Source: Trichoplax adhaerens
Lineage: Eukaryota; Animalia; Placozoa
NCBI RefSeq assembly: GCF_000150275.1
Contig: NW_002060944.1
Location: 3,786,123-3,850,122, forward strand
Length of the DNA: 64,000 nt
Direction of reading: 5' to 3'
In this document: positions 23,554 to 63,536 of the stretch, one piece after another
Numbering within the stretch: position 1 is the first letter of the stretch
Layout of the letters: every line of letters starts with the position of its first letter
The notes under the pieces: generated by a model
What the model was told of the DNA's origin: nothing
The model's input: the letters and a program-made list of their open reading frames with translations, nothing else
Database searches by the model: none
Program-made: the position numbers and the translations under genes

Positions 23554-24095
23554 TTAATTTTCATATCCGGAATGCATTAAGACTGTAGTTTCATCGTCAT
23601 TATCATCATTAGTATCACTTAAATTGCTGATACTGGTATGCAGATAGCTTGGACACAAGCCATGATAGCAATTGTATATAGTATCATGTAATTCTTGCTT
23701 AAAGTTTTCTTGATCATCATCATTCCACTTTTCATCCCATGTAAGACATTCCATTTGATCAAGATTATCAGGATAATTTCGAGGGTCATTAATTAAAATA
23801 GGTAAAATAGGAATGCCACCTGTACTAATGCAATCGTCGATAATACTTTTCACGCAAGGTATAAAATGTTGACATTTCATTTCATTTCCTTCTTCGACTT
23901 GATCTTCATGCAGTAAAACTACCATTCGAAAATGTCGAATAAATTTTAAATAAATAGTAGGATGAATATCATAAGGAGCATTGTTGAACATCGTCATGAT
24001 TTGGCCATCGAAATAGCGCTTTAGCTGCGATACTATCGTTGTTGTAAGATCAACAGCAGGTTGAGTATAACAATGTCTTATAATTAAAATTTTCT
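23554..24095 (-). CDS. Gene A last exon: TIR/SEFIR-like cytoplasmic domain plus acidic tail
   Basis: Acceptor tgtag|. Translation KILIIRHCYTQPAVDLTTTIVSQLKRYFDG...YLKFIRHFRMVVLLH...IPILPILINDPRNYPDNLDQMECLTWDE...QENFKQELHDTI has an alternating beta/alpha pattern and a box-3-like end. Confidence 0.75.
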
Positions 24096-27000
24096 CTACA
24101 ATTTAAAAAAAGAGTGAAAATGAATGAATCAAGGGAAAGTTGGATCGATATTAATTTCCTAGAATTAACATATATCACTTTACAATTATGAAATATTTTA
24201 TCTAACTATTTGTGAAATACGTCAATGGAATGAGATAGTATAAATTCTTAATATAAGAATATCGATCTATTGCTTCTGTTTCAGATCAATGTTTTCTGCA
24301 GCATTAGCGGTATCTGTTACGGTTTACTAGATGATCTTTATTGTAGTTTGAAACTGTTTTATTAACTTTCATAATCTTGAGATTATTTCCAAAATTAGAA
24401 ATCAGAATTGACAAATCACACAACAATATAACAAACTTACCTTTATCGGTTTTAATTTTTGTTGCCATCATTACTTTCGTAAAATAGGAGAGCTTAGTGC
24501 GCCGATCAGGTATAAAGACAACAATCAGGACAACAATCGAAACTAAACCCGTTGAGCTTCCAAAGGTGATAATTAAAATGATCTTTATCGTACCTGAATA
24601 ACAGACAAGAAGGAGTAATTGGTATCTATATTAAAAGAGAGGCATGAATGAGGCAATAATGATTTAACGTAGGATCCATGTCGGGCTATCAATCGTCTGC
24701 CCATACTATTACAACGATTGATTTAGTCAAGCGAAAGTCCTATATAATCGATTTAAAATAACGCTTTCTAGCTACTTGAAAATTTCAATTCTATTTCATG
24801 ATAACACTAATCTATCGCTAAATATATAAGATTAGCGCTCTCTAGCCAAAACGAACGACAGTTAACTATGGATTTAAGATTATTACTCGAATGGATCGAT
24901 CAAGTTACTTTTACGGGTAATCAAAATCATGGTGGATCGGTGGCTAAAATATTGAACTTCCTCTCAATAAATTGTTCATTGGCAATTATGATTAAATAGT
25001 TCAACGGATGAGATGAACTTACTGTAGCTCGGGATTTAACTTAAGCTGTTCCATCGCTTGGACAGTATTTTATACTGCACAATATTTGTTCGAGAGCATG
25101 CCTTAATACGACATATTGCTATATGCAATATTAGTTCTAGCCTGTGATATCTTCAATGTCTTTAAATTACTATTGTAGTTAACTTTAAATTCGACATTAC
25201 CTGAACGAATTATGTTATAAACTCATTACTACTGGAGTTCAAATAGATAAAGAGACTGTAATCTAAAATTTGATTGACTGTTCTTGGTTGGCTGGTAAAA
25301 AGTAATGAATCTAATTAACGCCTGAAATTAGCATTTCCTCACAGTAATGGATTATAAGGATTATCAATAAAGTCAAAACAACGACCGCCATGACTGGCAA
25401 TAGATGATAAACAATTTCATTAAAGCATGAATGCGATAGTCGTAGGAACTGAAGTTATTCTTAGCATCAAAGTGAATTCGGTGAATAACAATCATAGTGA
25501 TCATGTTCATGTTCTTACTTGATGATTTAACAGTCCAGCTTTGATGGCCCGGCACAGTTTTACATGGATTAACTGATTGACATGAAATATTTCCAAGATC
25601 TTCACCCTCCGTTCGATAGATTGTCAAAGTGCTAACTGTGGTAGTATCATTAATGACCTTTGTCCTTTGAAATCGGAAAGGATAAGGAAGACATTGAGTT
25701 TGATTACATTTCGTCCATTGGATTTGAGGCCTTGGATTTCCTCTAGCGAAGCAAGAAAATGTAACAGAAGAATCCTTCTCTTTATCCTTTCGAGCGCTAA
25801 GAATTATACCGCTGTTAATACATTCTAGAATAGAAAAGAAGTATTCCCATCGAATTAATACTTGTGCAAGGATAGTCTTACAGTTTAATCAAGTTAGAGC
25901 ATAGTAAAGTAGCTTAATAGCACCAATCGGTGCAGAAGAGCCAATGATACTGGAGAATAACACAATTATTTGCGATTAGAAGCTGGATTTGTATAGAACT
26001 TAGCTATCACCATCAAGTAGTGACTGATAAAGACAAAAATCATCTTGACTAATGGTCATCCAATCTTATTGAACATGTGCATATTCAAAATTGGTTAGGT
26101 GAAATTGGGAAATGAAAAGCCCAACATCAAAGTGATCAAGAATCGATTATCATTAAAGTAGATTAAGACGATGATCACAGAAGGCACAAATAAATGATTT
26201 CGATACTGTTTTTATCCTCATCAAGTAGTAGCTGAAGTATTGGCTGATAAAGACACAAAATCATCATAAGTTAGGATCATCCATTTCTATTGAGCACGTA
26301 TTTAAGATTGGAAGGGTGAAATGGAAAATAAAAGCTCAAAAAATCAAAACGCTTACGAATCGAATTTTGACTGAGCTATCAAAATTAGAAGCAAACCTTA
26401 CCTTGTGCTTGCAAATTGATAGATGCTTTCATTCCTTGAATACACTGACAATGCACGCCATAGTATTCAAATTGGTATTCTCCAAGATCATCCACGGTCA
26501 CATTTTGAATTCTCAAAGTGATATTGCGCTGACAGCAACCTAGATACGGCTTTGAACTAGAATTAGAGCACGGCCAACTTGAATTAGGGCATGCAAAATT
26601 TGAACTAATCTTGGTATTGGTTCCATCGTTGATGATGATATTTTTTCTTTTAAAATAAAAGCTTGCTTGGTAGGTGCAGTCCACTCCACATTGACATCCT
26701 TGGTATTGCATGGTAAACGTTATATCGTAAGGTAAACCGAAATATGCCAATTGATGAGGTTGAGCCGGTAATAATAGTTTGCAGACATTATCTTTATTAT
26801 AAAAAAAGCAAAAGTTGATCTTAGCCAAGCCATGATTCGACTAATCCTTGGTGCTACTTGATAATAAGTCATGCCAAATGTAGGTTAATTTTTAGACAGT
26901 AATCTCAATAAGATGAAATAATTGAAACTATTCTATCCGATTTCTATCTTTATTTATGTTAAATTTAAGATAAGTCTATGTACTATCGTGGAATTATGAA

Positions 27001-30000
27001 AGATATTTTCCCTAAATGTAATAAACTGTAAATAATATCTATCCCGAAATTAACTAGAACCCAATGCAATTATTTTGCGTGATTGGAAGTCTAAATTAAA
27101 CACTTGGTTCTATTTGATGATGAATCATTTTAAATGTAAGCTAGTCTTTATATATTGATCTCAAAAAGATGAAATAATTAAAGCTCTTCTATCTGATTTC
27201 TATCTGTACTTATGCTTTAAAACTAAAACTAGTCTATGTACCATCATAGAAATATTGTCAAAGAAATTTTCATTAAATGCAGAAACAGAAAATAATGGCG
27301 ATCCTGAAAATTAACTCTAACCCAATCCAATCATGTTACATGATCGAAAGTGCAAATTTAAATACATCATCTAGTTCAAATTAACTTGTTAGAGAAATAT
27401 TTTTCTATTATAAAAGATAGAGTAATTTTCTGATGTAATTTTTGAAACTAAGAGACAGCCTTCACTGAATGAAATGATTCAATTTATTTCTAACAAATGA
27501 ATAAAATTCCCATCAATCGTAGTCAATATAAGCATTCTTACCTGAAATTTGACTGGTTGCTGTAGTTAGGCGTCGATTTCACAAATATAAAAAATAATCA
27601 AAATCGTTCATTTATTCACATGATTAAATTTAGAAATAAAAACTCTACTGGAGTTATCGCTGGTAGCTATTCCAATAGGAGCGATACGAAAAAATAGAGA
27701 GAAAAATAATTCGTCCATTATGGCAATATTACAAAGAACTCAAGTAATTTTTGGTTATACCTATCTTAATTAGCTATTTATTGAGTCATTCTACTCTAGA
27801 AATTCAATAGAAATCAGTAATAATAATATTGATATAAATCTCACTCGACTAGATACAGTTCTATACAAAAAATACTGGAAGCAATGCATTTGCTCAAGAT
27901 TTCACTAATTCCATAACTAGCGATTTTAGCCCTCGTTATAAATTTGTGTATTCTATTTCTTTACTACCATTTCACTTTGGTACAGCCTTTACTATACGAA
28001 GTTAAAATATAAGCTAATTGAAAATAATAGCTTAAAGTATTTATATATCCTTTAGATGACTATGATCTATTTACTTCAATCCGTCTTTAGTCGTCTATTT
28101 TCTACTACTTAGAAAACTTGAAATGGACTGCATGCTTTACAAGTCGAAATTCAATCACGAACACTTTGTTTTTGGAATACTTTGTTCGTAATGTGACCAA
28201 AAGAATGGCAATGATGATATTAAACATTTTTTACATAGAAAATATTTGTAGTAAATCTTCGCTCTTTTAGTCCAGTACAATTTTTGAGTATGATGAAGAG
28301 ATGCAAAGGTAATAATAAGATCAGTTATCTAGATCGGAATTGTAACCTTTATTTACACTAACTATCAGCCAAATAACTTGTTGTATAAGATTAATTTCTA
28401 TTTTGATCATTGAGAATTCCGTGATTAGATTTAGATGAGAGCAAGATCTCATAAAATCAGCCTTACCTAATGTAGATACTGATGGTCGTTGAACATTCCA
28501 AATTTTACGACTTAATAAACTTTGACATAAATTGACAGATCGGCAGGAGATATTTCCAATTTGGTTCGGATTATTTCGATCGATTTTCAGAGTAGCGACT
28601 ACGGTGGTTTCATTAATTATCTGGATATTTTGACTTGGGAATAGATGAGAACGACATTGACCATGATGACATTTTGCCCATTGGACTGACGGCCTAGGAA
28701 TTCCTTTTGCGGTACACTTGATGGTAGTAGATAAATCAGTATCATTACCCATTCGATCTGATTGCACAATACCTAAATTAATGCATTCTATTAGAAAAGA
28801 GAAGCATTTGCTCTTCAGTTTGTTCATTTATATGCATGCAATATCTTGAATAGTAGTGATGTAATCAAAACGGTATCTAGTGAAAGATCAGACGAAAGAA
28901 ATATGAAAAAATGATATATCAGAACCAATTGAAATGTACTTAAATTGTACCCTTTAATTCTAATTAATAAACACTCTCATCTTAGTAATCTCTAACTACT
29001 ATATACTTATGTCATAAATTACAAATTGCACTCATAGATTTCTATTTTAAAATCGGAAAACTATTTTAAGCCAGCTAAGTTGATGAGATATATGCTAGTT
29101 ACAATTGAAATACAGTTAAATTGGCTTCTTAAATTGCGACTAATAAATACTGTCATTTTAGTAATCTCTAATTACTATCTATTGGAGTAATAATAAATAC
29201 TACGCTCACAGATCTCTATTTTTAAATCTGAAACTATTCTAAGCCTACTTAGTCGACGAAATACATGCTGGCTACTTCCTTCCTGAATTCAATTGAAATG
29301 GAATTAAAATTGTGCTCTTAGATTGTAATTGATAAATGCTCCTATTTTAGCATTTTCGAACTACTATATACTTGTGCCATTAATTAAAAATTTCATTTAT
29401 AGATTTCTATTTTTATATCCGAAACTATTTTAAGCCTGCTCACTGGATAAGATTCATGCTAGTTACGTCCTTCCTGAAATCTCCGATTATCTATGATTAT
29501 TACAAACTTTTACAGCTGATTAAAAACACTTGTATATGTCTTCATTCTGAAAGCCTAAACGGGCTGTCAACAAAAAATAGACAAGAAGCACACTAGCATA
29601 CGTCTACTTTTATAGGTAACACTACAACATATTTTGTAAACAGTAGTAAGTAAATACCTAGTATCTACTTTTAACACAACTGTCATAAATTGTTATAAAA
29701 AATCGGCTAAAGTATCTGATTTCGAATCTCTGCAATTCTTGTCAACTTTAAAGTTGGCAAGAATACATCGCTAGTCTAGTACCTCCACTTTTTATAGGCA
29801 AGAAAATTCAGCAGCTGCATTAGCAATTATGCTTATAGACTTCTACCCTAACCGATAAATCAATTATCAACTTGTTTCATGGATGAGAATGTGCTAAACT
29901 ACTTTAATCCTGGCCATCAAACTTAAAATTTTCTCCAACTTGCAGAAAATGTTAGGCAAGTAATCAAACTTGCGACTTGTAGCCTATCTTTTTTAACACT

Positions 30001-32195
30001 GTACTATGAAATTTGCCTTTCTAAAGAAAAGGTCAGACTAAAATGGGCATGATCTACAGTAATCAATAGACTGATATAGTTAAAACTATTTCGGTTTAAA
30101 CAGATTGCACGGTAAGACATTACCCAAACATACACGGTTGCAAAATACTGTATTTTTAATCATCGCCATACAAAATAGTTGTACCTTTAGCTTGTAAATT
30201 GACAATCGCTTGCTTATACCATGAGCATCCACACGAATGACCAGCAAATCGGAAATCATATTTCCCTACAGTCTGCTTTGACATCTTTCTAATCCTTAAC
30301 GTAATATTATACAGGCAGCATCGCGAATATGCTGTTGAGCAGGACAAACCACGACTAACGATTGTGTTATTCTGACTATCGGCTACTTTATTATTTCGTA
30401 GGAAGCAAAATAACGCTGGTACCATGCACAGATCATCGCAACTAAATCCACTAAATTTCATGGTAAACGTAAGATCATAGGGAAAACCATAATAAGCGGA
30501 TTGATGTGGTTGGTAAGGTTGCAGTTGACAATATTCGCCATTATCTGCAAGAAATGATTCATTTAAGATATGTAAAAGAGCGATGAAAATAGAATAGAAA
30601 TGACCTAAAGATTGTAAAGATATCATATAGAATGACAAGGCTATCATATAGTAGCTATGTTGTATAAGCTAAATCAGTATTGAATTACAGCTAGTGTTGC
30701 TATTTCTACTTCAAGATTTGATACCATCAAAGTCTACGATACTTGAAAATTTAAATATACCTGATGGTGATCCATTTAAAGATCTCGTCGATTGTATGGC
30801 CGTTGGCAATCTACAGCGGGCTAAGTAGTTCGAAGATAGAATGTTAGTCAGTAGAGATTATAAGATAGAACTTGGTATCCATTCGATATGATGAAGTAAG
30901 AAAGAAAGTTACGCTTGCCTGGCAAGTCATTGAATTCCGTTTTGGGAATATGAGCTAGAGCTGTAGATACTTGTCCATTTTGAATTAATATTACTAATAT
31001 TTGACTAAGTAAATCAACAAATAAAGTAGAAAAAATAACCAAAAAGTCTTATACATTCGAGCATAGCATAACTACAACTATGTTATCAAAGAAGGTATGG
31101 AATAGAAGAAAGTCCAGAAAGAATACTAGGATATCGCATGTCTGACAGAGCTTAATTACATCTTGCTAAATAAATAAGAAGAGGGACTCAGAAGACATCA
31201 AAGAAAAATCGTAATGACATTGCATACTCGTAGAGGATACGACATGGCTGTTGCTAATTAATTAAATAAAGCAAGTGAAATCGCGAAGGGCTATGAAAAA
31301 ATTCAAGGAAGCCTGTAAAATTGCTATAAAGTAAATAGCACGAGACCAATTGCGATCTAGTTATTACTGCGTTGAAGTAGACGAGTAAGCATAGGAAATG
31401 GGATGAAGTTAAACAAAATTTAAAAGGATTCTAAATCATAATGCAGCATAATTGTGGCAAAATAAATGAATAAAACCTTAAACTTTCAGTTAGCCAATAT
31501 CATAGATAAAGAAATTAATCAATACAATTGAAAATGATTATTTTACATAATAAAGTTTAGCTCTGACTGCTGTTTTAAGAAACTAATCACCATAAGAAAT
31601 AGAAAGTTATCAGGACATATTACAGTTTGATATCTCATCCATGATAAAATTTAATCAGGTTAGCTATTTGAATAAACGAATAATCATACGAAATAAGATA
31701 CAATTAAGCTAAATTATAAATGTTATCCTGTACTTATGCAAGGTAAAGCTTAGTTATGACGGCCATTCAAATAGACAAATAGTCATGAAGTATAAAAAAA
31801 TCAAGCAAATTAGCAAAGGTTTTAAGATTGTATGAACGAGGGATTTACTAAAATAAGTTAGTTGGTTAAATAGGCATGAATTACCAAAGGAAAGAAAAAA
31901 CCAAGGCAAGCTTATAATCATTTGCAGGAATAGAGGATAAATTATAATAATGCTTGCATTTTAATAGGATAAGTATACACATAAAATAGGAGAAAATTAA
32001 GTAAGATTGTAGTAACATTGTAGCAAGGATGAAGGATGGTAAAGCTACTAATTAGCAAAATGAACTACCATGCAATATGTATGAAATCTGAAAAAATATT
32101 TTCAATTCAATCGATTACTGCTATAATCTTACATACATGATGATGGATATCTTAAATATCATATTACTGGTCTTGAACGGTAGAGTCGTCGCCAT
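23554..32195 (-). CDS. Gene A: predicted type I receptor SP-Ig(V-like)-Ig(I)-Ig(V-like)-Ig(I)-TM-TIR/SEFIR-like, ~766 aa
   Basis: Hand-spliced exons: 32195-32137, 31004-30913, 30820-30761, 30544-30185, 28787-28467, 27559-27542, 26791-26402, 25824-25519, 24593-24441, 24095-23554. All GT-AG, continuous frame (2301 nt). The first two exons and the 18-nt micro-exon are least certain. Confidence 0.7.
24441..24593 (-). CDS. Gene A transmembrane exon
   Basis: ttcag|...|gtaagt, 153 nt, phase 1/1; IILIITFGSSTGLVSIVVLIVVFIP followed by basic DRRTK. Confidence 0.8.
25519..25824 (-). CDS. Gene A membrane-proximal I-set Ig exon
   Basis: VTFSCFARGNPRPQIQWTK...STLTIYRTEGEDLGNISCQSVN; ctag| acceptor, |gtaaga donor, 306 nt. 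Confidence 0.85.
26402..26791 (-). CDS. Gene A third ectodomain: Cys-rich atypical V-like Ig exon
   Basis: YFGLPYDITF...NITLRIQNVTVDDLGEYQF...HCQC; 390 nt, phase 1/1. Confidence 0.8.
28467..28787 (-). CDS. Gene A second ectodomain: I-set Ig exon
   Basis: TIKCTAKGIPRPSVQWAKC...ATLKIDRNNPNQIGNISCRSVN; 321 nt; donor |gtaagg. Confidence 0.85.
28950..29480. repeat. Intronic ~180-bp tandem repeat (3 copies); similar local duplications at 25990-26370 and 26900-27380
   Basis: Recurring tagtaatctcta..tactat...agatttctatttt.aaatc.gaaactatt.taagcc block. Confidence 0.7.
30185..30544 (-). CDS. Gene A first ectodomain: Cys-rich atypical V-like Ig exon
   Basis: YYGFPYDLTF...FCFLRNN...NITLRIRKMSKQTVGKYDFRFAGHSCGC; gcag| acceptor, 360 nt. 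Confidence 0.8.
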
Positions 32196-35414: not shown

Positions 35415-38400
35415 TTATAGCATATGAGATTCGTCTAGTAGCGGTGATTGATCACTATCATCGACATGAAGAGCTACAGGATCCACATCAGGATTAATAT
35501 TCCTATCGGTATACATCATACTGGTGCAAAGGTAGTCATTTTTCTAGAGAGATTCCTCCAATCTTTCATAGAAGTCAGACTGATGCTTTATATCCATATT
35601 ATCAGCCCATTCTAGACACTCGATATCATTGAAAAAGTGAAAATTTTGACGACTATTAACAGAAATTGTTATAATCTTACAATTATTATCATCACATGAG
35701 TGGAAATACTGCGCAATAAACGATTGAAGCCTTAGTAGTTAGATCGATTGATATCGTCGTCTGTAAGCATTAAAATAACCAATTTAAAATACTCAATCAT
35801 ATCATGATAGACTTGTAATTCATATATCTTTCCATCACGATTACTTAATTCCTTTACTCGGTTATCAAATTGACTTTCCTCTGCAGGATTGCGTTGCCAA
35901 TACATCGTTTCGTGCTCAGTGAACGGCACTGGTATGAAACCATAAACAATTCTCTTGACTTGATTTGATATTTGGCCATAGCATACGATTAAAATATTTT
36001 CTAAGATATCAAATAAGAAATTTTACATTACTTTTATACATCTAAAATCAAATTAAACGACTGTATGTTTATTTCTTTACTAATTTTAATTGCCAATCAT
36101 TCAATTTAAAGGTTATCGGTATAGAATCATCAATAAACTATATTACAATAGCAAGTGAATGCATTATATAAATATTCTTATTAAAACTAATCTTTTATAA
36201 CCGTTCATATATTTCATTACTAAATCGATCAGCTATCCAATTTCTAAAAGCTTTGCAATTATCAATGAACTACTTTATGGCAAAAAACCAATATCAATAT
36301 CTTAATCAAAATTAAATTATACAACGATTTATCCATTTCATTACTAATTCTAATTATCGATTATCCAATTTAAAAGCTATTGACTCATCAATAAATGAAT
36401 ACATTTGTTAAGGCAGTAAAATATCGTGAAAAATTAATCACATATTAATTGAGCGCATAGACTTGATTTAGCTTATGGGTGTGAGTCCATAGTTCCATTT
36501 TTAGGTAGAGGGTTGCAGGAAGGACAAGTAATTTGGTCGTAGTGAGCTATTTACGCTAGAATCTACTATAACTGTAGTTAATTATAGTGATTATATAATG
36601 GGAATCCTAAATTTGGCCTAGCTCAGAATTATAAGAGCAAGATTTACAGACTGACGCGTATGAATTATTCGTAGGCCTTCGTATAATATGGTATGTTTCG
36701 TAAAATTGCTAATTATTGGTCAAAGATCAAATATAGATGTTTAATACAAAATCTTGCTATGTAGTAACAGTAATTCATGTTATAGAAATGCTGTAGCTAG
36801 TACGACTAGACTGGATTTTAAAGAAGTCCTGAATGAGACATTTTGGTTGAATTAGCATCTATTATTGGAAAATTTACTTTAATTATAACTCTGTATGCGA
36901 TCCTACTTATTATAATATTAAAAATCTATTGAAGACTGGTAATTTCGATCAATGAAAGCATTATTGATTTTTCTCAGTTCTTTGCGTACAATACTATTAC
37001 TGTACTTGGCAAATAGTGTTACTATACTAAGTGAAATTTAGTATTGTAGCAGCTTTGTATTAATATTCTAATAAAAATAATTAATACCACGTTATGTCTA
37101 TTTTATTGCTGATTTTGATATTTCTACAATCATTAATATATAATTTTTCAGCGATATATAAATATAATCTATCAGTCTCCTAAATCATGTTAATCTAGGA
37201 CTAATTTTTTATAATAATAGCAATTTTTCCCGTCCATTTAATTTCTAAAAACTATACAAACATTGTAGTGTATTTAGAATATGCTGTAAATATATTCTAC
37301 TCCTAAATATAGACATGTTGTATTGCTCTTATATTTAGACAGATCTACAGTCCGCTTACTCTACATTCATATATAGACTACTGTATTTAGTTATTACGGT
37401 ACTCGCTGTTTTCTACAATCATCTGCTATTTTGTAACCTATTATGGTATATGTTGTATCTAATTCCACAATCCTATGCTCTGCTTGTGCTCTATCTTTAA
37501 AACTATAAATACTGGCGATTTCTACCTCAGAGTTCGTTAGCCTCTCAGTTAGTCTTCTAGTTAGTCTCTCACAGTCTAATACTTCTACTCGTCACTCACG
37601 ACAGCTTGCACGCTGATCTACCGTAACTACCCCCCTGTACTTCACATTACTAACCTACAATAAAGCATAACTTTTATAAACCCTTTGGTGTAATAATTGT
37701 AAATGGCGACTAAATCTCAATCCACTGAGATATTGAACCCTCCATCACAAACATCAATAAAGTATTTTATGCCGATGAAGATAAGGACATACCAACATTT
37801 TAATTAATACGACTGCCAATCTACTACGTTACTAATTTCAGTTGTCTAATTTTTAAGAGCCATAGAATCATTAATAAACTCTTTTATTCAAAAATACTCC
37901 ATATCAATGCAGCAATAAAATCAATTTATACTACTTTTATCCATTTTATGGCTGATTTTAATTGCCCGTTGTCCAGTTTTTAAGAGCTATGCAACTATCA
38001 AAAACTATTTGCTGTAATAACGAATATACTAACCACGACTTGGAGCAATTTGACCTACCAACTTGACCTGCTTCTGTGTGATTCTTCTTTCATGAATAAG
38101 TAGGCTAACAAATACCAGAAGTGCTATGGCAGCAATGCCGATAGAGATACCAATCGGGATCATCACTAGAGAATTTGGTTTATCGACTATCATGGCGTTC
38201 ATAATTTGGAAACGGAAAAAACTGATATGAAAGATAACGAAATTCAGACTACCAATAATGGCAGTGAATGGCCAGTATTATTATACTATCATTAGCCAAT
38301 ACTGTTCTAATGTTTGATGTCAATTTAGAGCTCAAAATTGCTGGACTAAAAATAATTCTAAATTTTGTATGCGTGCATGAAATATTTACCCTCAGTACGG

Positions 38401-43268: not shown

Positions 43269-43750
43269 CTATAGTAGTGGAGAACGATCATCGCCATTAT
43301 GATAGGAAGTTCTGTCAAATTGTGCTGAGTCGGTGAAATAATGTAAAGTTTCCTCTAATCTTTCATGAAATTCAATTTGTAAATTTACATTCATGTCATC
43401 AGTCCATTCTAGATATTCGATTTCATCCAGTAGATAAGAAAAATTTTGAGGACGATTCACAGAAATTGCTATGATTGCTCTCTCATCGATAATACACTTA
43501 TTGATAATACTACGCAAATAATGATTGAAATTGTGACTATCGGATCGAGTGACATTGTCGTCCATAAGTATTAATATTATCAAGTTAAAGTATTGAATCT
43601 TTTCATAATAGACTTCTAGTTCGTATGTCTTTCCATTAATATTATTGATTTCCCACGTCCGACCGTCGAATGAGATATCCTGTAAGGAATTATCGACTAA
43701 CTCGGTGACTGGACTTGGAATCGGGCCGTGACATGCAATTAGAATATTTT
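43269..43750 (-). CDS. Gene D last exon: TIR/SEFIR-like domain
   Basis: NILIACHG...YEKIQYFNLIILILMD...AIIAISVNRPQNFSYLLDEIEYLEWTDD...QIEFHERLEETL...DDRSPLL*. Confidence 0.8.
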
Positions 43751-46700: not shown

Positions 46701-48811
46701 AATTCGCAAACCCTATCAATCTTATCTGAGCTGAATTTGCCAATAAATTCAATCATTATAATATCCAATTTGGCGGCCAGAGTAAAATGACTAATACGAA
46801 TCGAAATTGTACTGCTATAACATAATATCAGAAATTAGAAGAAATCTTACCTTGAGGTGGTGCAACATTCCAGGTCGACTTGGATCGTATAAATCCGCAG
46901 AGATTTTTAGATGCACATGAAAAATTTCCAGTCTGTTCAGGTTGAGTTCGATCAAGGATTAGAGTACTACGAATAGTTTGATTGATAGTCTCAATAGTAG
47001 TATAATTTGATTTGGGTATAAAGTTTTCGATTCTGCCATGATAAGATCTTATCCAAGTGATTGTCGGTCTTGGGTTTCCACTCGCTATACATTGAAGTCC
47101 TACTTTTGGAGAGTTATCTTGCAGTGAGCTATTAACTATACCATTATTAACACATTCTAAATTCAATATAGAAATTAGAAAAAAAATGCTAGGATTAAAC
47201 TAAGGCTACCATAAGTATAAATCATTGATAAACTTTAACATTTTATTTTACAATAGCTGATAATGCAACAGATATTCAACGGTATTGGTCGGAGCTAGTA
47301 ACAAATTAATAGTACGTTTCTAGTTTTGAAATTGAACAATCATTCTTAATATTACCTCGAGCTTCTAAATCGACAAATGATTGACTTGACAATATACATC
47401 CACAGTTGTGACCAGCAAATAAAAAACTGTAATTGCCTAAATCGTTGCTAGTTAGATTTTTAAGTACCAAAGTAAAGTCATAAATACAGCAGTCATCTCT
47501 CCTAGGACAGTCTTTTCGAGTAATGACTACACTGTTATCATTATCTGCAACAACATTATTTCGAAGAAAGCAGCATTCAGCGTTAGCCACGCAGTCACCA
47601 ATCCTGCAACCTGCTGTATTAAATTTCACTCTAAATGTAAGATTGTATGGAAAATTAAAATATCCAAATTGTTGAGACTTCGAGGGTAATACTTGGCACG
47701 GGCTATCTTCAACTTAATCAGTCATAAAAAAGGAAAACAAAAATAACTCTACGTTAATAAGTCTAAGTCAATTTCTTGCCATAAAAAAGCTTTAAAATGA
47801 TAATCATTAATTATTATAGAGTGTAAAATAATACAATTGATCAATTCGACGCTGAAACTATTTTAAACTAAGAATAAAATAACAATTAAACGATTAATTA
47901 ATTAATTATCGACATGAGCCAGATCGATTAACTCATTACATGATTTAACACTATGGTAATAATTATTTAATTACTTAACAAACAACCACAGTATTTGATA
48001 AAACTGCCGTATAATCGGTGTTTAGAGCAGAGTTCATTTAGACTAGAACTGAATTATTAGCTAAAGAATTGATATCCAAGGAGAAATGACAGAAATAAAA
48101 ATAGTTTATCGTTTTCTACGACTAAAATATTATAGATAAATCAACGTAGAATCAACTCTAAACTATCTCAAAGGTGTCAGCTGACGAGCTGATCTCGCTA
48201 TACGAGAATAAATCAGGATGAATTGTTTCATAATTTATCGTGCCGTAAAATTGTATAATCGATCGTTTAATAATAAGAACTTGATATAAGTGATAAAATA
48301 GATGAAAATCTAGGAGAAGTAAGCAATTGCATTTCGATCTGGATAGTTGAAATATTCTTGAAAGAGATGATATTAAAATTAAACTAGATAAAACATGAAT
48401 TAAATTTATGATACTTACCAACAAAAGGAAAGTCTGGCATCTTACAACGTGCTAAAAAAGTTAAATTATAAAAGCTTTCAGTTATTTTCTACCGAAATAT
48501 AGGATGCTAGATACCGTCTATTAAAAGTCCTCACAATGAAGTAAAAACTAAAAAGATTGAAAACTATGGATATGTGATCAAATGTAATCTGAAATTCAAA
48601 GGTGAGTAATGAAGGAGCAAATAGAACTATGACATAATTGTAGATGTCCTTAACATCAAGTCTGGATAAAAAATTGATATTGTAGCAGTCCTGTCTTTAA
48701 TAACCTACGCGGTAAACTATTTTCTTTCTTCAGAGAAAAGTCATCACTCCCAACACAATAAAGAGCTAAATTGAAAAGTAAAATCCATGAAATGATCGAA
48801 TTTTCCGCCAT
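43269..48811 (-). CDS. Gene D: SP-Ig(V-like)-Ig(I)-TM-TIR/SEFIR-like receptor, ~475 aa
   Basis: Exons 48811-48709 (MAENSIISWILLFNLALYCVG), 48451-48419, 47712-47356, 47156-46851, 44049-43903, 43750-43269. All phase 1, GT-AG, 1428 nt open frame. Confidence 0.85.
45700..46560. repeat. ~84-bp intronic minisatellite in gene D (Ig2-TM intron)
   Basis: aaagccgattctattttaac...ggattaa...tcggttgattat units at 45776, 45859, 46265 and 46349. Confidence 0.8.
45864..46179 (+). mobile_element. Shortened, diverged solo LTR of family X
   Basis: TGTAAC...ATCACG termini, TSD AAAGC (45859-45863, 46180-46184); homology to X at both ends; absent from the paralogous gene E intron. Confidence 0.8.
46851..47156 (-). 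CDS. Gene D I-set Ig exon
   Basis: LQCIASGNPRPTITW...STLILDRTQPEQTGNFSCASKN. Confidence 0.88.
47356..47712 (-). CDS. Gene D Cys-rich V-like Ig exon
   Basis: CQVLPSKSQQFGYFNFPYNLTF...FTLVLKNLTSNDLGNYSFLFAGHNCGC. Confidence 0.85.
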
Positions 48812-51168: not shown

Positions 51169-51169
51169 C

Positions 51170-52420: not shown

Positions 52421-52950
52421 TTAATAATGATGGTCACGGGACTGTAGCAGTGGAGATTCATCATCATCATCTCCAAGAAAATAAACAGATTCGCCATCAT
52501 CATAAGCAGTTCTGTCGAATTGTGCTGAGTCGGTGAAATAATGTAAAGTTTCCTCTAATCTTTCATGAAATTCAATTTGTAAATTTACATTCATGTCATC
52601 AGTCCATTCTAGATATTCGATTTCATCCAGTAGATAAGAAAAATTTTGAGGACGATTCACAGAAATTGCTATGATTGCTCTCTCATCGATAATACACTTA
52701 TTGATAATACTACGCAAATAATGATTGAAATTGTGACTATCGGATCGAGTGACATTGTCGTCCATAAGTATTAATATTATCAAGTTAAAGTATTGAATCT
52801 TTTCATAATAGACTTCTAGTTCGTATGTCTTTCCATTAATATTATTGATTTCCCACATCCGACCGTCGAATGAGATATCCTGTAAGGAATTATCGACTAA
52901 CTCGGTGACTGGACTTGGAATCGGGCCGTGACATGCAATTAGAATATTTT
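52421..52950 (-). CDS. Gene E last exon: TIR/SEFIR-like domain
   Basis: Nearly identical to the gene D TIR exon; tail AYDDGESVYFLGDDDDESPLLQSRDHHY*. Confidence 0.8.
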
Positions 52951-55900
52951 CTAAAATATCAGAAAAAGAAAATTAAATCATTAATAGTTTCATTGAAAGC
53001 GATTAATACCGCTACTCTTCTATTTCAAGATTAATTATATTTTAATATTAAGTAATCTAATATTCTAAGGCTACATACATTAATCATTGATTAAATACTC
53101 ACGACGACTAGGAGTAACTTGACGGACTAATTCTTTCTTTCTTCTTACGATAGTTCTTCTATAAACCGATCTGCTAATGACTGCCAGAAACGCAATAGCA
53201 GCGATACTGGTAGATAAGCCAATCAGAATAAAAGGTAAAAAATATTTTGGTTTGTCGACTATCGTAGCATTCATAGTTTGAAAAATAGAAAAAATTAATC
53301 GAGATTAAGATATTCTCACGAATGAAGATGGCAATAAACGACTACAATAATTATCCTACTATCAAGCAAGTAATTCTATAGCACAGTAGATTTAGATGAA
53401 GACTAAAAATTGCCGTACTCATTGAATAAGAATTATAGAATTTAAATATACATGTGAAAATACGAGTATATACGCCCATCGATGACGATTATTCGTTTTA
53501 TTCGTAAATGCTATCGTTGGAGTATGCAGCACAGTGCTCAGATTGAAGGCAAAAATAGCACTTTCGTCAGAAAATGATACAGCATAATACCTTTAAGATA
53601 TCAATTATGGCCTTGAATAATCCATTTACACAAGATTAGCTACCGGTATGCGTTAACGAATATGAAATGACAAATTCTATTTTACAGCGTACTCTTGCTA
53701 CGTGTATATGCTGTACTCCAATTTCATTCTATAGCGAAATTAATTTTTTATCGTAAGCCTGTGAAAAGATCATTCAATTATAGTTATTGGTGTTGACTAT
53801 TTATATCATATTCTTTTAAAGAAATTCTTTAATTTTTTAGAGTAAAACAGGAATAGGTTTAAAGGTATCTATGGATTCGTAGAAGATAGATAATATTTAT
53901 AGTAAAATATTAATGTAAAGTTAATGTGCTCGACTACGAAGAATCATCAAAATTTAGGTTTAATTCAAGCTGATGGTCTATTCTCTTATTTAGTGAAAAT
54001 TAGTTAAGGATATATGTAAATACGAATAGGGTTGTTATTGGGAACTACAAGGAATTTTAAAGAAAAGAAGTAAATGCAATAAAGGTAGGGCATAATCTGT
54101 CGAATTGCCTAAATAGAATTCTTTCATGCTACTTTGCATTACGACGGCAAGGAATGAGTGGTTAGGTTACTCACTAACCTAGGATCGGGCGAGAGAATTT
54201 GCAATGGAATAGTATTATTACAGGATATAGAACTTAACATGAGTCGTAGAAAACTTTCTAGCTATCTTAACGCTAAATATCCTTTTATACTGGTTAAAAC
54301 TTAAATTTGAAGATCTATAATAAATAGTCTTACGTAAGTAAATCATGATTGAACTTAATCCTTTAGGTATGGCGAAGTATAACAAATCAAGGTTAAAAAT
54401 CTTATAACTGAGTATTAGAAGTACAAACTCTTCTCTGTGGTACTTGATTGAAACAAAAAATGACTTATCGAAAAGTTTCAGTATATTATTGAATGCTATC
54501 GCAAAAAGAAAAATTATGCGTGTAGTTGTAAAAAAATCAATTCCTTTTAATGAACTTCTGTCAATATCAACACGGATTGATGAATATTACATGAAAGCTG
54601 ATCATCTTTTAACTTGTATATCTAGTCTAATTTGTAAGAGATTAAGCGTTATTTTCAGGATGAATATCACTTGAAAAATGACCCTATATTAACATGCGAA
54701 TCTAGCGTAGTCTGACTTATATTGGATTAAACGCTATATTCAGTCGATAGATAGTACTTGAAAGCCGATTCTATTTTAAGTTGCAAATTTCGTCAGACTA
54801 ATTTACACTATGTTAATCCGTTACAGTCGGTTGATTATGATTATTGCTTGAAAGCCGATTCTATTCTAACTTGAAATATCCTACCAAGTACAATTGATGC
54901 TAAATTAAACTCTTATAGTCGGTTGATTATTGTTTGAGAGCCGATTCTAATTTAACTTGTAAAACTATCAAGTACAATTTACGATAGATTAAATCGCTAA
55001 ATTCAAGATGAAATATCACTTAAATATGGATCTTATTTGGTTTCTAAATGGAATCGATCTAAACTATGCTCGATCAATCGCGTCATTGAACATAAAGATT
55101 ACTAGATGTAGATAATATTTACATAGCAACTCGAATCAATCTAAAGTATACTGGATTAACTAATATACTCAAGATGAATATTACTTGAAGCAAAGAATAT
55201 TTAATTTATGAATCCTATTAACCTCATGAGAATTTGCTGATAAATTCAATCATTATAAAACCCAATTTTGTGTCCAGAGCAAAAAAATGACGATTGTGAA
55301 TCAAAGCTGTGTTGCAATAAGATAATTTAAGAAATAGAAAAAAATCTTACCAGAAGGTGGTGTAACGTTCCAAATAGAATTAGATCGTACAGATTTGCAG
55401 AGATTATTAGATTTGCATGAAAAATTTCCAGTCTGGTATGCTTGAGTTCGATCCAGGTTTAAAGTACTATGAATAGTAGTTTGACTGATAATATTAATTA
55501 CAATATGATTTGGTTTGGCTATAAAATCATCGTCTTTGCCATCATTATATCTTGTCCAGACGATTGTTGGCCTTGGGTTTCCACTAGCTGTACACTGAAG
55601 TGCTACTTTTGTAGATGATGTATCTTGCCTTGTGCTATTAATTATACCATCATTAATGCATTCTATTTACAATATAGAAATTGGAAAAACAGTACTTGAA
55701 TTAAACTAGAGCAGCCAAAACTATAAGTCATTGATAAACTTCAATACTATGATTCACAGTAGTGGATAATGTAACAGATATTCAACAGAATTGGCCGCAG
55801 CCAGTACCAAACTAATGCTACATATATAATTTTCAAATTAAATGATCATTCTTAATAGTACCTCGAGCTTTTAAATCGACGAATAATTGATTTGACAGTA

Positions 55901-57327
55901 TGCATCCACAGCTATGAGAACCGAATAAGAAACTGTAATTGCCTAAATCATTAGCCGTTAGATTTCTAAGGGCTAAAGTAAAGTTATAGATAAAGCAAAA
56001 ATTTCCTTGATTTTCCCCAGGACAAGCGTAATAGGAAATGCTCACATCTCTTTTATTATTATCTACAACAATATTATTTCGTAGAAAACAGTATTCAGAT
56101 CTTTCCTTGCATTGGTTATTACCATCTTTAAATTTCACTCTAAATGTAAGATTATACGGGAAATCAAAATATCCAAATTGTTGTGACTCGTATCCTAATA
56201 TTTGGCAATGCTTATCTTCAACGTAATCAATCATAAAGAGGAGAAAAAATAACTCCATGTTAATTAGTCTGTCCAACGCAATTTCTCGCTTAAAATGAAG
56301 CTTTAAAATGATTATCATCAATCGATGTAGAATGTAATCTAATACAATCGATCTATTCGATGCAGAATCTATTTTAAGTTAAGAGTAAAATATCGATTGA
56401 ACGATTAATTATCAATTTGGGCTAGATCGATCGATTTCTTACATGATTTAATACTATGACAATAATTATTGAATTGTTCAACTAACAAGTAAATGTGATA
56501 TTCAATAAAACTGTACTATTTTGTGTGCTTAGAGGAGAATTTATTTTAATTATAACTAAATTATTAGCTAAAGAATTGATAACCAAATAGAAATGACTGA
56601 GATTAATATAGAATATCATTTTCTACTGCTAAATTATTATAGACAACTAGTGCAATAGATAAATTAATTTAGAATTAACTCTAAACTACCTCTAAGATAT
56701 CAGCTAACGAACTGATCTCGTTATAAGAGAGTAAATCAGGATAAAAATTGTATTATAATTTATCGTGCTGTGGTAATTATATAGTCAATCGTTTAATAAT
56801 AAAAACTTGGTATAAATGATGAAGTAGATGAATATATTGTAGAAGTAAGTAATCGCAATTGGGCTAGATAGTTCAAATTTCTAGAAAAAGACTATATGGA
56901 GATTAACAAGGTAAACATAAATTGACCTTATGCTACTTACCCGTTGGAGGATTATCGGGCAACTTACAACGTGCTAAAACGATAAATGATAAAAGCTTTC
57001 AGTTGTTTGCTACCCGAATATAGGATGCCAGATATTACCTATTAAACTTTTTTGCAATGAAGTAAGACTAAACCGATCAAAAAATATCGATATGTGATCA
57101 ATTAATTATAAGCTAAATCCAAAGATGGACTAAAAACGAGTAGATAATACTTGGATAACTGTTGGTATCCGTTAAATTGAGTCTAAATGAAAAAATCGAT
57201 ATAACAGCTGTCTTATCATTAGTAACCTACGCGGTAAAGCGTTTTCTGTCTTCGGATAGAGAGCATTGCATCCAATAAGAGCTAAATTGAAAAATAAAAT
57301 CCACGATATGATTGATTCTTCCGCCAT
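52421..57327 (-). CDS. Gene E: SP-Ig(V-like)-Ig(I)-TM-TIR/SEFIR-like receptor, ~493 aa
   Basis: Exons 57327-57231 (MAEESIISWILFFNLALIGCNA), 56973-56941, 56215-55862, 55662-55351, 53258-53103, 52950-52421; 1482 nt open frame. A possible 5' UTR exon ends at ~57802 (|gtaaga). Confidence 0.85.
54560..55060. repeat. ~85-bp intronic minisatellite in gene E (paralogous to that in D)
   Basis: aaagccgattctattttaa units at ~54761, 54851 and 54938. Confidence 0.8.
55351..55662 (-). CDS. Gene E I-set Ig exon (not in the ORF track)
   Basis: ECINDGIINST...LQCTASGNPRPTIVWTR...STLNLDRTQAYQTGNFSCKSNNLC; 312 nt open. Confidence 0.88.
55862..56215 (-). CDS. Gene E Cys-rich V-like Ig exon
   Basis: CQILGYESQQFGYFDFPYNLTF...YCFLRNN...FTLALRNLTANDLGNYSFLFGSHSCGC. 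Confidence 0.85.
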
Positions 57328-61000: not shown

Positions 61001-61017
61001 GCGCTACTACGATAAAG

Positions 61018-63536
61018 TTATGCATCATAGCTCGAATATGAATTTAAATGATATTGCATATCAGTATATAGGTGTTCGAGAGTTTCTACCTTATTCTCGT
61101 CACTTCCATTACTATCGTATCAACAACATTCAAATTTTTTATCAAGAATTTCTGGATAGCTTCGAGGATTATTTATAAGAACCGACATAAACGGAAGATT
61201 GTCATTACAATCCCGGATATTTTTTAAACGTGGTCTAAAGTGTCTACATTCAGTTCTACTTCTATTATTGCAGTCTTCATAAATTAAAATTGCTAATCGA
61301 AAATGTCGAATAAGTTCAGAGTAAACAGTAGGATGTATTTTATGAGGAGTAGTACTCGACATTTCCATAATTTCGCCATCGAAACAAGTGTTTAACTGGG
61401 ATTATATCTTTTTAGCAAACTTGATGCCGTATACAGCGTGGCAATATTGTATGAATAGGACTTTATCTGTATTTTTAATTAAAGAAATAGGTAATTAGCA
61501 AGTCTATACAATAACTTAGATATATTCGATCATCTTGCAATTAATGTACACATATATATTTATCTGAAATCAAAATGTTAATATATAGTGGAATTTTATT
61601 TATGTTTACAATTATTGTAAGTGTAATAAAAATAGTAGCAATGTCTTAGAGGTAATTAGTTAAGTCCTTATAAACTTAGAAAGTATTCATCAGCTTATAG
61701 AATCAATCTAAAGCATTATTACATGATCACTCCTTGTACTCCTAATCAGATACTATCAATGTTTCTCATAACTTAAAGTATCTATCAGTAATATCAAATA
61801 ATGAATAATGATAGATACATAAATGTATGGATGCTTAACACTAAGTAAATGTTTTGAAAAGTTTATCTGTCGATCTCATAAATTAAATTAATATATGGCA
61901 CATAGTAAATAATCTTTAAGGGTTGGCAATTCTATATAGAGATTAATTTGAAGCCTTGCTATTACACGAATGAGTAAGATATAAAAGTCGATTGCAATAT
62001 TATCGTATATACATAGTTACTAATCACAAGTATTAATACATTTCATCGCATATTTCTATCATTATGATAGCTCTAGTTACGTTTAATATAGTGCCATATA
62101 TGGCAGTACTAGGGTGTTATGGATATCTGTAGCTAGAATTTGAATGTGATCCTAAAAACTTTAAATAAAGGGCTAACGGTTAGCAGCCATGGTATTTATT
62201 TCATTTCTATTAGCATCTTATAACATATATAAATATAATGTTATACACGTGTATGCTAACGCATGTATATATACAGTTTATACAGGAATACTAACTAAAG
62301 CCTTGACAAAATGTAAAAATATTGCAAATTATGAAGCAAAGATATCATGTAAAAATCTTACCTCGATCAGTTTTAATATTTGCATCAATATTTTCTTAAA
62401 GAATGAGAGTTTTGTGCATGGATGAGGTACAAATACGATAATCAGAATTACAATCGCAAGTAGACCCCCAATATTACCAAATATAATGACCAAGATGCCT
62501 GGCTTATCTTGTTAACACATATGTAAAAAGAGGAAAAGGGAAAGAGATCAATTAATGAATTATTGTAAGCAAATTATATCAGAAGATTGCTAGGTTTGCT
62601 TGATGGATGGCATTAACTAATTTATAGCATATCCTCTGTCATGATTCTACGACAGCAAAATGGCATAGAAGAGGAAAGTTTAATTGTTGAAGATAAAAAT
62701 TAAATTTGTACTTAAATTTTAAATATGGTTAAGAATAATCTTACCGTCTTCAACTATGAAGAATTGTGATCCTGAATGTTGGCAAAGATTAATCGATGCA
62801 CATAAAATATTTCCAATCTGCTCAGGTTCACTTCGATCTACTATTAAAGTACTACGAACAGTTCTTTTAGTACCATTAATAGTCTCAACTGTGATACGCC
62901 TAAAAGGAATATCTGAGCATTGGCCATTGTGACATCGTTTTCACAGTATCTTTGGCATTGGATCTCCATTAGCTATACAACTAACATATGTGGTTGTTCC
63001 TGGAGTAGGTTCTTTACTTTCGATGATACAACGATTAATACATTCTATACTCAATATGAATTATAATAATATAATCAATTTAAAATACTATAGTAATTGC
63101 ATATGAGTATTATAATCAATAAACGATCAGAGTCACTCTGAGATGAATATCACATTTCTACTATTCGAATACGATTTATAATACAACCTCAAGCTTTTAA
63201 TTAGGTAAACGCTTGCTCAGTATCGGTACATCCACAAGGTAGCAATTCGAAATGTATAATTGCCTACGTTGTTAATGGTCAGATTGTCAATGGGTAGAAT
63301 ACAATTGTAAGTAAGACATTTATTCATTGCGATCGAGCAGGAAGCATGGTTGATAATTATCTTATTTTTGTTATTGGCCAGTGTGTAATAACGAAGAAAA
63401 AAGTACATAGTATAATCCAAGCAACGGTCCGTGGAGTCGAATTTATTAAATCTTATTCGAAATGTAAGATTATCCGGAAAGCCATAGTATTCATATTGTA
63501 GTTACGGAAAAGGCAATACTTGGCAGAATTTCCTAT
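61018..63536 (-). pseudogene. Gene F: disrupted Ig-Ig-TM-TIR-like paralogue (A subtype); 5' exons not identified
   Basis: Ig1 ~63536-63188 (TAA, frameshift); Ig2 63044-62745 (TGA at the conserved Trp, 62941-62943); TM ~62507-62362 (frameshift); TIR 61466-61018 (TGA 61120) with KVLFIQYC...FDGEIM...IHPTVYSELIRHFR matching gene A. Confidence 0.85.

What the first reader, a model, noticed from the sequence alone, without database searches (positions are those of the whole stretch)
23554..63536. Tandem array of divergent Ig-TM-TIR-like (IL-1R-architecture) receptor genes hidden across scattered ORFs
Seen: at least five co-oriented paralogues (A, pseudo-C, D, E, pseudo-F) plus a relic share one exon plan (signal peptide, 'RC[KR]xP' micro-exon, Cys-rich Ig, I-set Ig, TM, one large cytoplasmic exon) with phase-1 introns. 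Established: Ig+TM+TIR is the IL-1 receptor architecture, and tandem birth-and-death Ig-receptor clusters typify immune and allorecognition loci (e.g. Hydractinia Alr). Inference: the cytoplasmic exon is a highly divergent TIR/SEFIR (STIR) fold, probably below standard HMM thresholds. If the genome is placozoan, a group generally described as lacking canonical TLR/IL-1R, this would be an unrecognised innate-immune or self/non-self receptor family.
Basis: partly seen in the sequence, partly recalled or inferred. Interest (0 to 1): 0.92.

Follow-up and report, generated by a model that had tools for sequence, protein, structure and literature searches.

The report
Placozoan Ig receptor array, TIR-like tails
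This stretch of the Trichoplax genome holds a real, transcribed cluster of fast-evolving membrane receptor genes with antibody-like outer domains and an inner domain that folds like a TIR immune-signalling domain, although no sequence method recognises it as one; placozoans were thought to lack such receptors.

Summary
The window is Trichoplax adhaerens. On its minus strand, 23.5-63.5 kb, lies a tandem family sharing one exon plan: signal peptide, RC[KR]xP micro-exon, Cys-rich Ig-like exon, canonical Ig exon, TM exon and one cytoplasmic exon. All introns are GT-AG and phase 1. Spliced RNA contigs from four studies join all six exons of gene E. "Pseudo-C" and "A" read as one open eight-exon frame with a duplicated Cys-Ig module. 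The window therefore holds three intact genes (A/C, D, E) and two pseudogenes, and a further copy, G, lies just beyond its end.

My verdict is a divergent TIR-like tail at about 0.6 probability, with SEFIR unsupported. The scan reached the same reading for the neighbouring gene G (s1-733982).

The parts
23554..31048 (-). Gene A/C (TRIADDRAFT_53319, extended; orthologue TrispH2_011471). Eight exons: 31048-30913 (leader, no in-frame ATG in this assembly), 30820-30761 (RCRLP micro-exon), 30544-30185 (Cys-rich 1), 28787-28467 (Ig 1), 26791-26402 (Cys-rich 2), 25824-25519 (Ig 2), 24593-24441 (TM), 24095-23554 (cytoplasmic domain and stop).
   Evidence: The frame is open for 755 codons, and all introns are GT-AG and phase 1. 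The H2 model P0012 maps to these exons at 91-100% identity. Both Ig exons hit Pfam Ig. No RNA was laid on this gene.
35547..40074 (-). The cytoplasmic exon is split over two frames (36022-35735 and 35738-35547). TM exon 38277-38032. Degenerate Ig exon 39591-39241. The Cys-rich exon is spread over three frames (40074-39717).
   Evidence: Searches show stops and frame changes inside the matches. H2 annotates only a 188-aa fragment, TrispH2_011472 = P0010.
43269..48811 (-). Gene D (TRIADDRAFT_53320, extended), 475 aa. Exons: 48811-48709 (signal peptide), 48451-48419 (RCKMP micro-exon), 47712-47356 (Cys-rich), 47156-46851 (Ig), 44049-43903 (TM), 43750-43269 (cytoplasmic domain and stop).
   Evidence: The ORF is intact, and all introns are GT-AG and phase 1. 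Pfam Ig_3 E 1.9e-9. An X10 contig of 1,857 nt with the D-type TM-exon start and a divergent Ig exon indicates transcription.
52421..57327 (-). Gene E, 493 aa. Exons: 57327-57231 (signal peptide), 56973-56941 (RCKLP micro-exon, 33 nt), 56215-55862 (Cys-rich Ig-like), 55662-55351 (Ig), 53258-53103 (TM and juxtamembrane), 52950-52421 (cytoplasmic domain, acidic tail, stop).
   Evidence: Spliced contigs in X5, X6, X10 and X14 (four studies; X14 is a labelled RNA-Seq run) join all six exons, with CT..AC ends on the + strand.
52505..52948 (-). Cytoplasmic alpha/beta domain of E (148 aa), which was the AlphaFold2 target. Elements: betaA 2-7, alphaA 12-23, betaB 31-35, low-confidence loop 38-42, alphaB 44-53, betaC 56-62, alphaC 68-87, betaD 91-97, alphaD 104-107, betaE 112-115, alphaE 121-147.
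   Evidence: pLDDT 78, pTM 0.77; fold searches; language-model neighbours are TIR clusters.
43291..44330 (-). Homogenised 3' block shared by D and E (E: 52491-53549). It is 94% identical, intron included, against 70-77% for the rest of the two genes.
   Evidence: blastn; dS 0.037 in the cytoplasmic exon against 0.32-0.57 in the Ig and Cys-rich exons.
61001..63501 (-). Pseudogene F. Cytoplasmic exon 61401-61001 has in-frame stops and has lost its 5' part. TM exon 62511-62332. Truncated Ig exon 62940-62722. Truncated Cys-rich exon 63501-63220. No signal-peptide or micro-exon was found.
   Evidence: It is 84% identical at nucleotide level to gene G beyond the window.

Best explanation
The region is a placozoan-specific tandem array of type I membrane receptor genes that evolves by birth and death. 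Each intact gene encodes a signal peptide and a short Cys-containing linker (RC[KR]xP). It then encodes one or two copies of a two-domain ectodomain module: an atypical, disulfide-rich V-like Ig domain followed by a canonical I-set/C2-type Ig domain. A single TM helix with a basic juxtamembrane stretch of about 24 residues follows, then a cytoplasmic alpha/beta domain of about 145 residues, and then an acidic tail.

Shown: the genes, their splicing (E fully, D partly), the Ig domain, the restriction of the family to this locus, the predicted flavodoxin-like fold, and the homogenisation of the signalling half of D and E while their ectodomains diverge.

Inferred: the cytoplasmic domain is a highly divergent ('cryptic') member of the TIR superfamily. 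Ligand binding by the variable ectodomains brings receptor chains together. The clustered TIR-like domains then recruit cytoplasmic TIR or SEFIR adaptors, since Trichoplax has MyD88-like proteins but no known transmembrane TIR receptor. The signal would feed the NF-kB-type pathway, in microbial sensing or in self/non-self recognition. In E, D, A and one relative the tail carries a [DE]xxxL[LIM] motif, which suggests endocytic sorting.
For: Architecture and splicing.

Ig domain: (Ig_3/I-set, E down to 8e-11). For the Cys-rich module, a profile search of PDB sequences returns only V-type Ig N-domains, weakly: CEACAM1 E 0.004, VEGFR1, nectin-2, CD2.

Family size: the cytoplasmic exon has 7 matches in the 105.6-Mb genome, all within C1413:3.808-3.853 Mb. 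Only 10 proteins reach E <= 1e-3 among 1.84 billion representatives.

Language-model neighbours: for E (0.81-0.87) and for P0007, which is 19% identical to E (0.78-0.79), every named neighbouring family is TIR, TIR_2 or ThsB_TIR.

Context: the domain sits directly behind a TM helix and juxtamembrane stretch in an Ig receptor, as in IL-1R-type and sponge or cnidarian Ig-TIR receptors (PMC5094078, PMC2858798, PMC13372038).

Gap it would fill: Kamm et al. 2019 found 16 TIR proteins in Trichoplax sp. [quoted passage not shown]

Evolutionary pattern: D and E are 94% identical across the TM and cytoplasmic exons and the intron between them, against 70-77% elsewhere. dN/dS is 0.77 in the Ig exon and 0.47 in the Cys-rich exon. 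Two pseudogenes lie in the array.
Against: No sequence method links the domain to TIR. Pfam and PADLOC, run on every member at E <= 10, gave nothing. The family profile and three single members against PDB sequences gave no TIR. hhalign against a 13-row TIR_2 profile gave probability 0.2%, though that profile is narrow (Neff about 3).

The box 1, box 2 (RDxxPG) and box 3 (FW) motifs are not recognisable. The Pro at the betaB-alphaB loop is missing in D and E.

Language-model scores are below 0.9, which the tool calls 'a lead only'. The structure rests on a shallow alignment.

Ligand, partners and expression site are unknown. The homodimer prediction gave no answer.

Confidence: 0.6

Rival explanations
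1. The genes and architecture are as described, but the cytoplasmic domain is a lineage-specific flavodoxin-like (Rossmann-like three-layer) domain with no common ancestry with TIR. It would signal or traffic by another mechanism, such as binding a nucleotide or cofactor, or acting as a docking module.
Confidence: 0.3
2. The cytoplasmic domain is a SEFIR domain (IL-17 receptor / Act1 type), as the reader allowed under 'TIR/SEFIR (STIR)'.
For: SEFIR belongs to the same superfamily as TIR. Trichoplax has a SEFIR transmembrane protein and a SEFIR-Death adaptor (PMC6321704), so SEFIR partners exist.
Against: No Pfam SEFIR hit appeared at E <= 10 in any member. No SEFIR structure is in the top 50 of either VIA list or in the Foldseek list shown. 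No SEFIR family is among the language-model neighbours. The earlier follow-up on the neighbouring gene G also rejected SEFIR (s1-733982).
Confidence: 0.04
3. Whatever the tail's ancestry, the family may serve cell adhesion or allorecognition (self/non-self discrimination between placozoan clones) through homophilic Ig-Ig binding, rather than microbial sensing.
For: The family shows tandem birth and death, two pseudogenes, fast ectodomain divergence (D and E 61-62% identical in protein, dN/dS 0.47-0.77) and a homogenised signalling half. This is the pattern of polymorphic recognition loci. The closest weak matches of the N-terminal module are the adhesion-type V domains of CEACAM, nectin and CD2.
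Against: No population data were examined. T. adhaerens and Trichoplax sp. H2 proteins are 91-100% identical where compared, but these lineages are very close, so the comparison is uninformative. No functional data exist.
Confidence: 0.3

Closest known systems
Invertebrate Ig-TIR ('IL-1R-like') receptors: sponge AmqIgTIR1/2, cnidarian and amphioxus IL-1R-like genes
   Same: They are type I receptors with extracellular Ig domains, one TM helix and a cytoplasmic domain of the TIR fold class. They occur as multiple lineage-specific copies. The literature takes them to have arisen repeatedly by domain shuffling (PMC2858798, PMC5094078, PMC13372038).
   Different: Those receptors carry TIR domains that Pfam recognises, and this domain is invisible to every HMM tried. 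The N-terminal module here is an atypical Cys-rich V-like domain. The module number is 2 or 4. No orthology is detectable.
Vertebrate IL-1 receptor family (IL-1R1, IL-1RAcP, IL-18R, ST2, SIGIRR)
   Different: The vertebrate family has three Ig domains (one in SIGIRR), conserved box 1-3 motifs, IL-1-type ligands and a co-receptor. None of these is shown here, and the box motifs are absent.
BCAP 'cryptic TIR' domain (PDB 5for)
   Different: BCAP is a cytosolic adaptor, not a receptor tail, and shows no sequence relationship to this family.
Flavodoxin-like domains (flavodiiron proteins, SsuE) and CheY-type receiver domains
   Different: No FMN-binding loop or phospho-acceptor pocket residues are present (reading of A4). 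Those are soluble prokaryote-type redox or phosphorelay modules, not tails of animal Ig receptors.

Membership tests
TIR domain (Pfam PF01582 / PF13676, STIR clan) | Significant match to a TIR-family HMM | tested here: not met
   There was no TIR, TIR_2 or ThsB hit at E <= 10 for any of 13 members in Pfam or PADLOC. The PF01582 and PF13676 genome scans hit other loci only.
TIR domain (Pfam PF01582 / PF13676, STIR clan) | Profile-profile similarity to TIR | tested here: inconclusive
   hhalign of A4 against A5 (one TIR_2 subfamily plus the SARM-like TIR, Neff about 3) gave probability 0.2%. HHpred against the full Pfam and PDB70 libraries could not be run.
TIR domain (Pfam PF01582 / PF13676, STIR clan) | Five-stranded parallel beta-sheet with alternating helices that superposes on solved TIR domains | tested here: met
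TIR domain (Pfam PF01582 / PF13676, STIR clan) | Box 1 (F/Y-D-x-F-I-S-Y), box 2 (R-D-x-x-P-G, BB loop) and box 3 (F-W) motifs | tested here: not met
   Reading of A4. Strand A is hydrophobic and followed by His, Cys or Gly, but it has no box 1. A Pro lies before helix B in most members but not in D or E. Helix E keeps only a partly conserved Phe.
TIR domain (Pfam PF01582 / PF13676, STIR clan) | Catalytic Glu on helix C (NADase-type TIRs only) | tested here: inconclusive
   On helix C, most relatives and G carry Glu five residues after the most conserved Phe (Asp in P0013), while E and D have Arg and A and F have Lys. Equivalence to the catalytic Glu needs a residue-level superposition, which these tools do not give.
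SEFIR domain (PF08357) | HMM match or structural match to IL-17R or Act1 SEFIR | tested here: not met
   There is no Pfam hit and no SEFIR chain in the lists.
IL-1 receptor family | Extracellular Ig domains, single TM helix and cytoplasmic TIR in one spliced product | tested here: inconclusive
   Ig, TM and tail are joined in RNA contigs and the Ig domain meets Pfam thresholds. The tail is TIR-like by fold only.
IL-1 receptor family | Three Ig domains and sequence relationship to IL-1R family members | tested here: not met
   There are two Ig-like modules in D and E and four in A/C. The profile search of 1.84 billion proteins found only this small family.
Flavodoxin / CheY receiver | FMN-binding loop after strand 1, or acidic pocket plus conserved Thr/Ser and Lys | tested here: not met
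   Reading of A4 shows no such conserved residues. There is no Pfam Flavodoxin or Response_reg hit.

The most novel reading that the evidence does not exclude
Placozoans have a transmembrane entry point to their TIR / MyD88-like / NF-kB machinery after all. It would be a private, rapidly diversifying family of Ig receptors whose TIR domain has diverged beyond sequence recognition. The array would work as a variable recognition locus, for microbes or for self/non-self, whose ectodomains diversify while gene conversion keeps the signalling half uniform.
Probability: 0.35. Interest if true: 0.8.

Novelty: new variant of a known kind. Interest (0 to 1): 0.62.

Why it matters
The main survey of placozoan innate immunity (Kamm et al. 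2019, PMC6321704) found TIR adaptors and downstream components. It found no TLR, no IL-1R-like receptor and no membrane-anchored TIR protein, so the recognition step of the pathway was left open. These genes are annotated only as 'Ig-like domain-containing' or hypothetical proteins. They do not appear in that paper's supplements, and the full-text library searched does not mention them.

If the tail is a working TIR, this array would supply the missing receptor class in one of the simplest animals. It would add a fourth early-branching lineage (after sponges, cnidarians and amphioxus) in which Ig-TIR receptors arose or persisted. It would also be a natural example of a TIR visible only by structure.

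Independently of the TIR question, the locus is a compact, testable model of receptor birth and death with domain-restricted gene conversion.

Tried and rejected
1. SEFIR reading: rejected, with no HMM, structural or language-model support.

2. First AlphaFold2 run on a 4-row alignment: pLDDT 37.7, unusable. It was replaced by the 13-row run.

3. Sequence links to TIR: Pfam and PADLOC on all members, the family profile and three single members against PDB sequences, and hhalign against a TIR_2 profile. All were negative. The control TIR profile is narrow, because two homologous-protein searches gave little: one search returned only the query's own cluster and one search returned one subfamily.

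4. The search for homologous proteins with the family profile added only one protein. Its length window excludes the full-length receptors.

The source organisms and gene context of relatives P0003-P0009 and P0013 (Logan/ENA contigs) therefore remain unknown, and that they are other placozoans is only an assumption.

6. Complex prediction, two copies of the E cytoplasmic domain: 'no answer', score 0.00. This is no evidence either way.

7. Reading 'pseudo-C' as a dead gene: rejected in favour of the N-terminal half of A.

8. Literature search for the gene identifiers: nothing found.

9. Joined spliced proteins were assembled only inside scripts, to check reading frames.

Full report
**Identity of the window.** The window is G000:C1413:3786123-3850122 of a 105.6-Mb assembly with 30% G+C. 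Gene models from it are TRIADDRAFT_53319 (XP_002109921) and TRIADDRAFT_53320 (XP_002109922) of Trichoplax adhaerens, with near-identical orthologues TrispH2_011471, 011472 and 011474 in Trichoplax sp. H2.

**The observation.** Stop-to-stop frames on the minus strand show a repeated set of exon-sized open frames between 23.5 and 63.5 kb. tblastn with the exons of E and A maps every copy. It finds none in the first 23 kb of the window or in the 10 kb before it. It does find one more full copy (G) and a Cys-rich relic within 8 kb after the window end (the coordinates printed there are 123 too low because of a slicing slip, and are corrected here).
- The canonical Ig exon passes Pfam thresholds in A, C, D and E: Ig_3/I-set, E 8e-11 to 7e-6.
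- The RC[KR]xP motif occurs exactly three times, each directly behind an AG acceptor, at 56971, 48449 and 30818.

**Splicing.** One read-laying run on 52300-57400 gave contigs from four studies.
- A 1,448-nt contig of a labelled RNA-Seq run (X14) joins 57337-57231, 56973-56945, 56216-55862, 55662-55353, 53259-53103 and 52950-52542.
- Every skipped part ends CT..AC on the + strand, which is GT..AG on the gene's strand. The same joints appear in X5, X6 and X10.
- After small boundary corrections for bases that fit on both sides, the E model has six exons and 493 codons. It has one terminal stop and phase-1 introns throughout.
- In E the acceptor used by D before the Cys-rich exon reads CG instead of AG. 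The RNA uses an AG six bases downstream, which removes two codons.
- An X10 contig carries the D-type start of the TM exon and 54 differences in the Ig exon, so D is transcribed too.
- D gives an intact 475-codon model with the same plan.

**'Pseudo-C' and 'A' are probably one gene.**
- C has a leader, a micro-exon, a Cys-rich exon and an Ig exon, but no TM or cytoplasmic exon.
- A has Cys-rich, Ig, TM and cytoplasmic exons, but no leader or micro-exon within the 1.5 kb that separates it from C.
- The C Ig donor and the A Cys-rich acceptor are both phase 1. The junction restores a G|AT Asp codon, exactly as at the micro-exon to Cys-rich junctions of E and C.
- The eight exons give 755 open codons, and the H2 annotation joins them (P0012).
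- Two caveats remain. No RNA was laid on this gene. Exon 1 also has no in-frame ATG in this assembly, whereas the H2 model begins with Met at the aligned position.

**Pseudogenes.**
- The copy at 35.5-40.1 kb has its cytoplasmic exon in two frames and its Cys-rich exon in three.
- F (61.0-63.5 kb) has in-frame stops in the cytoplasmic exon, has lost that exon's 5' part, and has truncated Ig and Cys-rich exons. It is 84% identical in DNA to G.

**The Cys-rich module.** Pfam finds nothing except one weak Ig_CD22 hit (E 0.014) in F. A profile of five copies searched against PDB sequences returns 23 weak hits (E 0.004 to 2). All are N-terminal V-type Ig domains: CEACAM1/3/6/7/8, VEGFR1, MXRA8, nectin-2 and CD2. 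They align on the E-F strand motif L-x-I-x-N-L-T-x-x-D-x-G-x-Y. From my own knowledge, CEACAM and CD2 N-domains lack the canonical disulfide. That fits a V-like domain in which Phe or Gln replaces the second canonical Cys and other cysteines take over.

**The cytoplasmic domain.**
- It occurs seven times in the genome, all in this locus.
- A profile of four copies found only 10 proteins at E <= 1e-3 among 1.84 billion representatives. Three are the Trichoplax models. Seven are short unnamed proteins from Logan/ENA contigs.
- No sequence method sees TIR or SEFIR.
- With 13 rows, AlphaFold2 gives pLDDT 78 and pTM 0.77, and four of five models agree. The order of elements is betaA-alphaA-betaB-loop-alphaB-betaC-alphaC-betaD-alphaD-betaE-alphaE.
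- Foldseek puts flavodoxin-type proteins first (E about 5e-4), with SARM1 at rank 31.
- ESM-Atlas feature neighbours of E (best 0.87) and of the 19%-identical P0007 (0.79) include, among named clusters, only TIR-clan families. The tool rates such scores as leads.
- Reading the alignment shows no flavodoxin or receiver signature. It shows a TIR-like rhythm instead: a hydrophobic strand A right after the juxtamembrane stretch; a loop with Pro before helix B in most members; helix B running into a strongly hydrophobic strand C; a conserved aromatic on helix C; strand D followed by N-x-P-x-x-[YF]-P-x-x-L; and strand E ending in Trp. The classical boxes are absent.
- I put TIR-superfamily membership at about 0.6, an unrelated flavodoxin-like domain at about 0.3, and SEFIR at a few per cent.

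**Evolution of the array.** D and E are 94% identical over 43291-44330 / 52491-53549. That block covers part of the cytoplasmic exon, the intron, the TM exon and about 280 bp upstream. Everywhere else, introns included, they are 70-77% identical. dS is 0.037 in the cytoplasmic exon against 0.32 (Ig) and 0.57 (Cys-rich), and ectodomain dN/dS is 0.47-0.77. This sharp boundary indicates recent gene conversion or unequal exchange confined to the signalling half. It agrees with scan note s1-794348.

**Comparison with the known.**
- Ig-TIR receptors exist in vertebrates, amphioxus, cnidarians and sponges, and are thought to have arisen more than once (PMC2858798, PMC5094078, PMC13372038).
- For placozoans, Kamm et al. 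2019 reported 16 TIR proteins but no TLR and no TIR protein with a TM segment (PMC6321704).
- The present genes are not in that paper's supplements or anywhere in the searchable literature.
- The family is therefore best filed as a new, cryptic variant of the Ig-TIR receptor kind, with membership of the TIR superfamily still to be proven.
- The earlier follow-up on the neighbouring gene G (s1-733982) reached the same reading. Here it was re-derived on other paralogues, which is not independent evidence for the homology.

**Limits.**
- The homodimer prediction returned no answer.
- Joined spliced proteins were built only in scripts for frame checks and were not sent to any search or fold tool.

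Noticed in passing
window:6209-7309 (-) and window:15172-16236 (-): Two intronless paralogous rhodopsin-family GPCR genes (366 and 354 aa; Pfam 7tm_1, E 3e-33 and 1e-37) lie upstream of the array on the same strand.
   Followed up: partly
window:43291-44330 vs window:52491-53549: There is a sharp-edged 94%-identical block between D and E, covering the TM exon, an intron and most of the cytoplasmic exon, in genes that are otherwise 70-77% identical. This looks like gene conversion restricted to the signalling half.
   Followed up: yes
window:56215-56222 (E) vs window:47712-47714 (D): E has lost the ancestral acceptor before the Cys-rich exon (CG where D has AG). The RNA uses an AG six bases downstream, which drops two codons.
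   Followed up: yes
window:56941-56945 and window:55351-55353: All four RNA data sets differ from the assembly at the last bases of E's micro-exon (three letters, changing Thr to Val) and at one base at the end of the Ig exon (synonymous). This is either a polymorphism or an assembly error (tables 5 and 5c).
   Followed up: partly
window:30913-31048 (-): The leader exon of A/C has no in-frame ATG in this assembly, although the Trichoplax sp. H2 model starts with Met at the aligned position. The true start, or a further 5' exon, is unresolved.
   Followed up: partly
C-terminal tails: window:52424-52480 (E), 43272-43300 (D), 23557-23600 (A): Acidic tails end in a [DE]xxxL[LIM] motif (DESPLL, DRSPLL, ETTVLM; also DTVPLL in relative P0003). 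The motif resembles acidic-dileucine endocytic sorting signals. This is inference from reading.
   Followed up: no
L035:~7930-8180 (about 7.8-8.05 kb beyond the window end): An isolated Cys-rich-exon relic lies upstream of gene G, with no matching Ig, TM or tail exon nearby (coordinates corrected by +123).
   Followed up: no
L015:415-2409 (+) = C1413:2448213-2450207: A single-exon 664-aa ORF carries a TIR_2 domain and SAM domains (a SARM1-like set; a source names it ADP-ribosyl cyclase). It is the only PF01582 hit in the genome scan.
   Followed up: partly
window:3892-4058: Assembly gap of 167 N.
   Followed up: no
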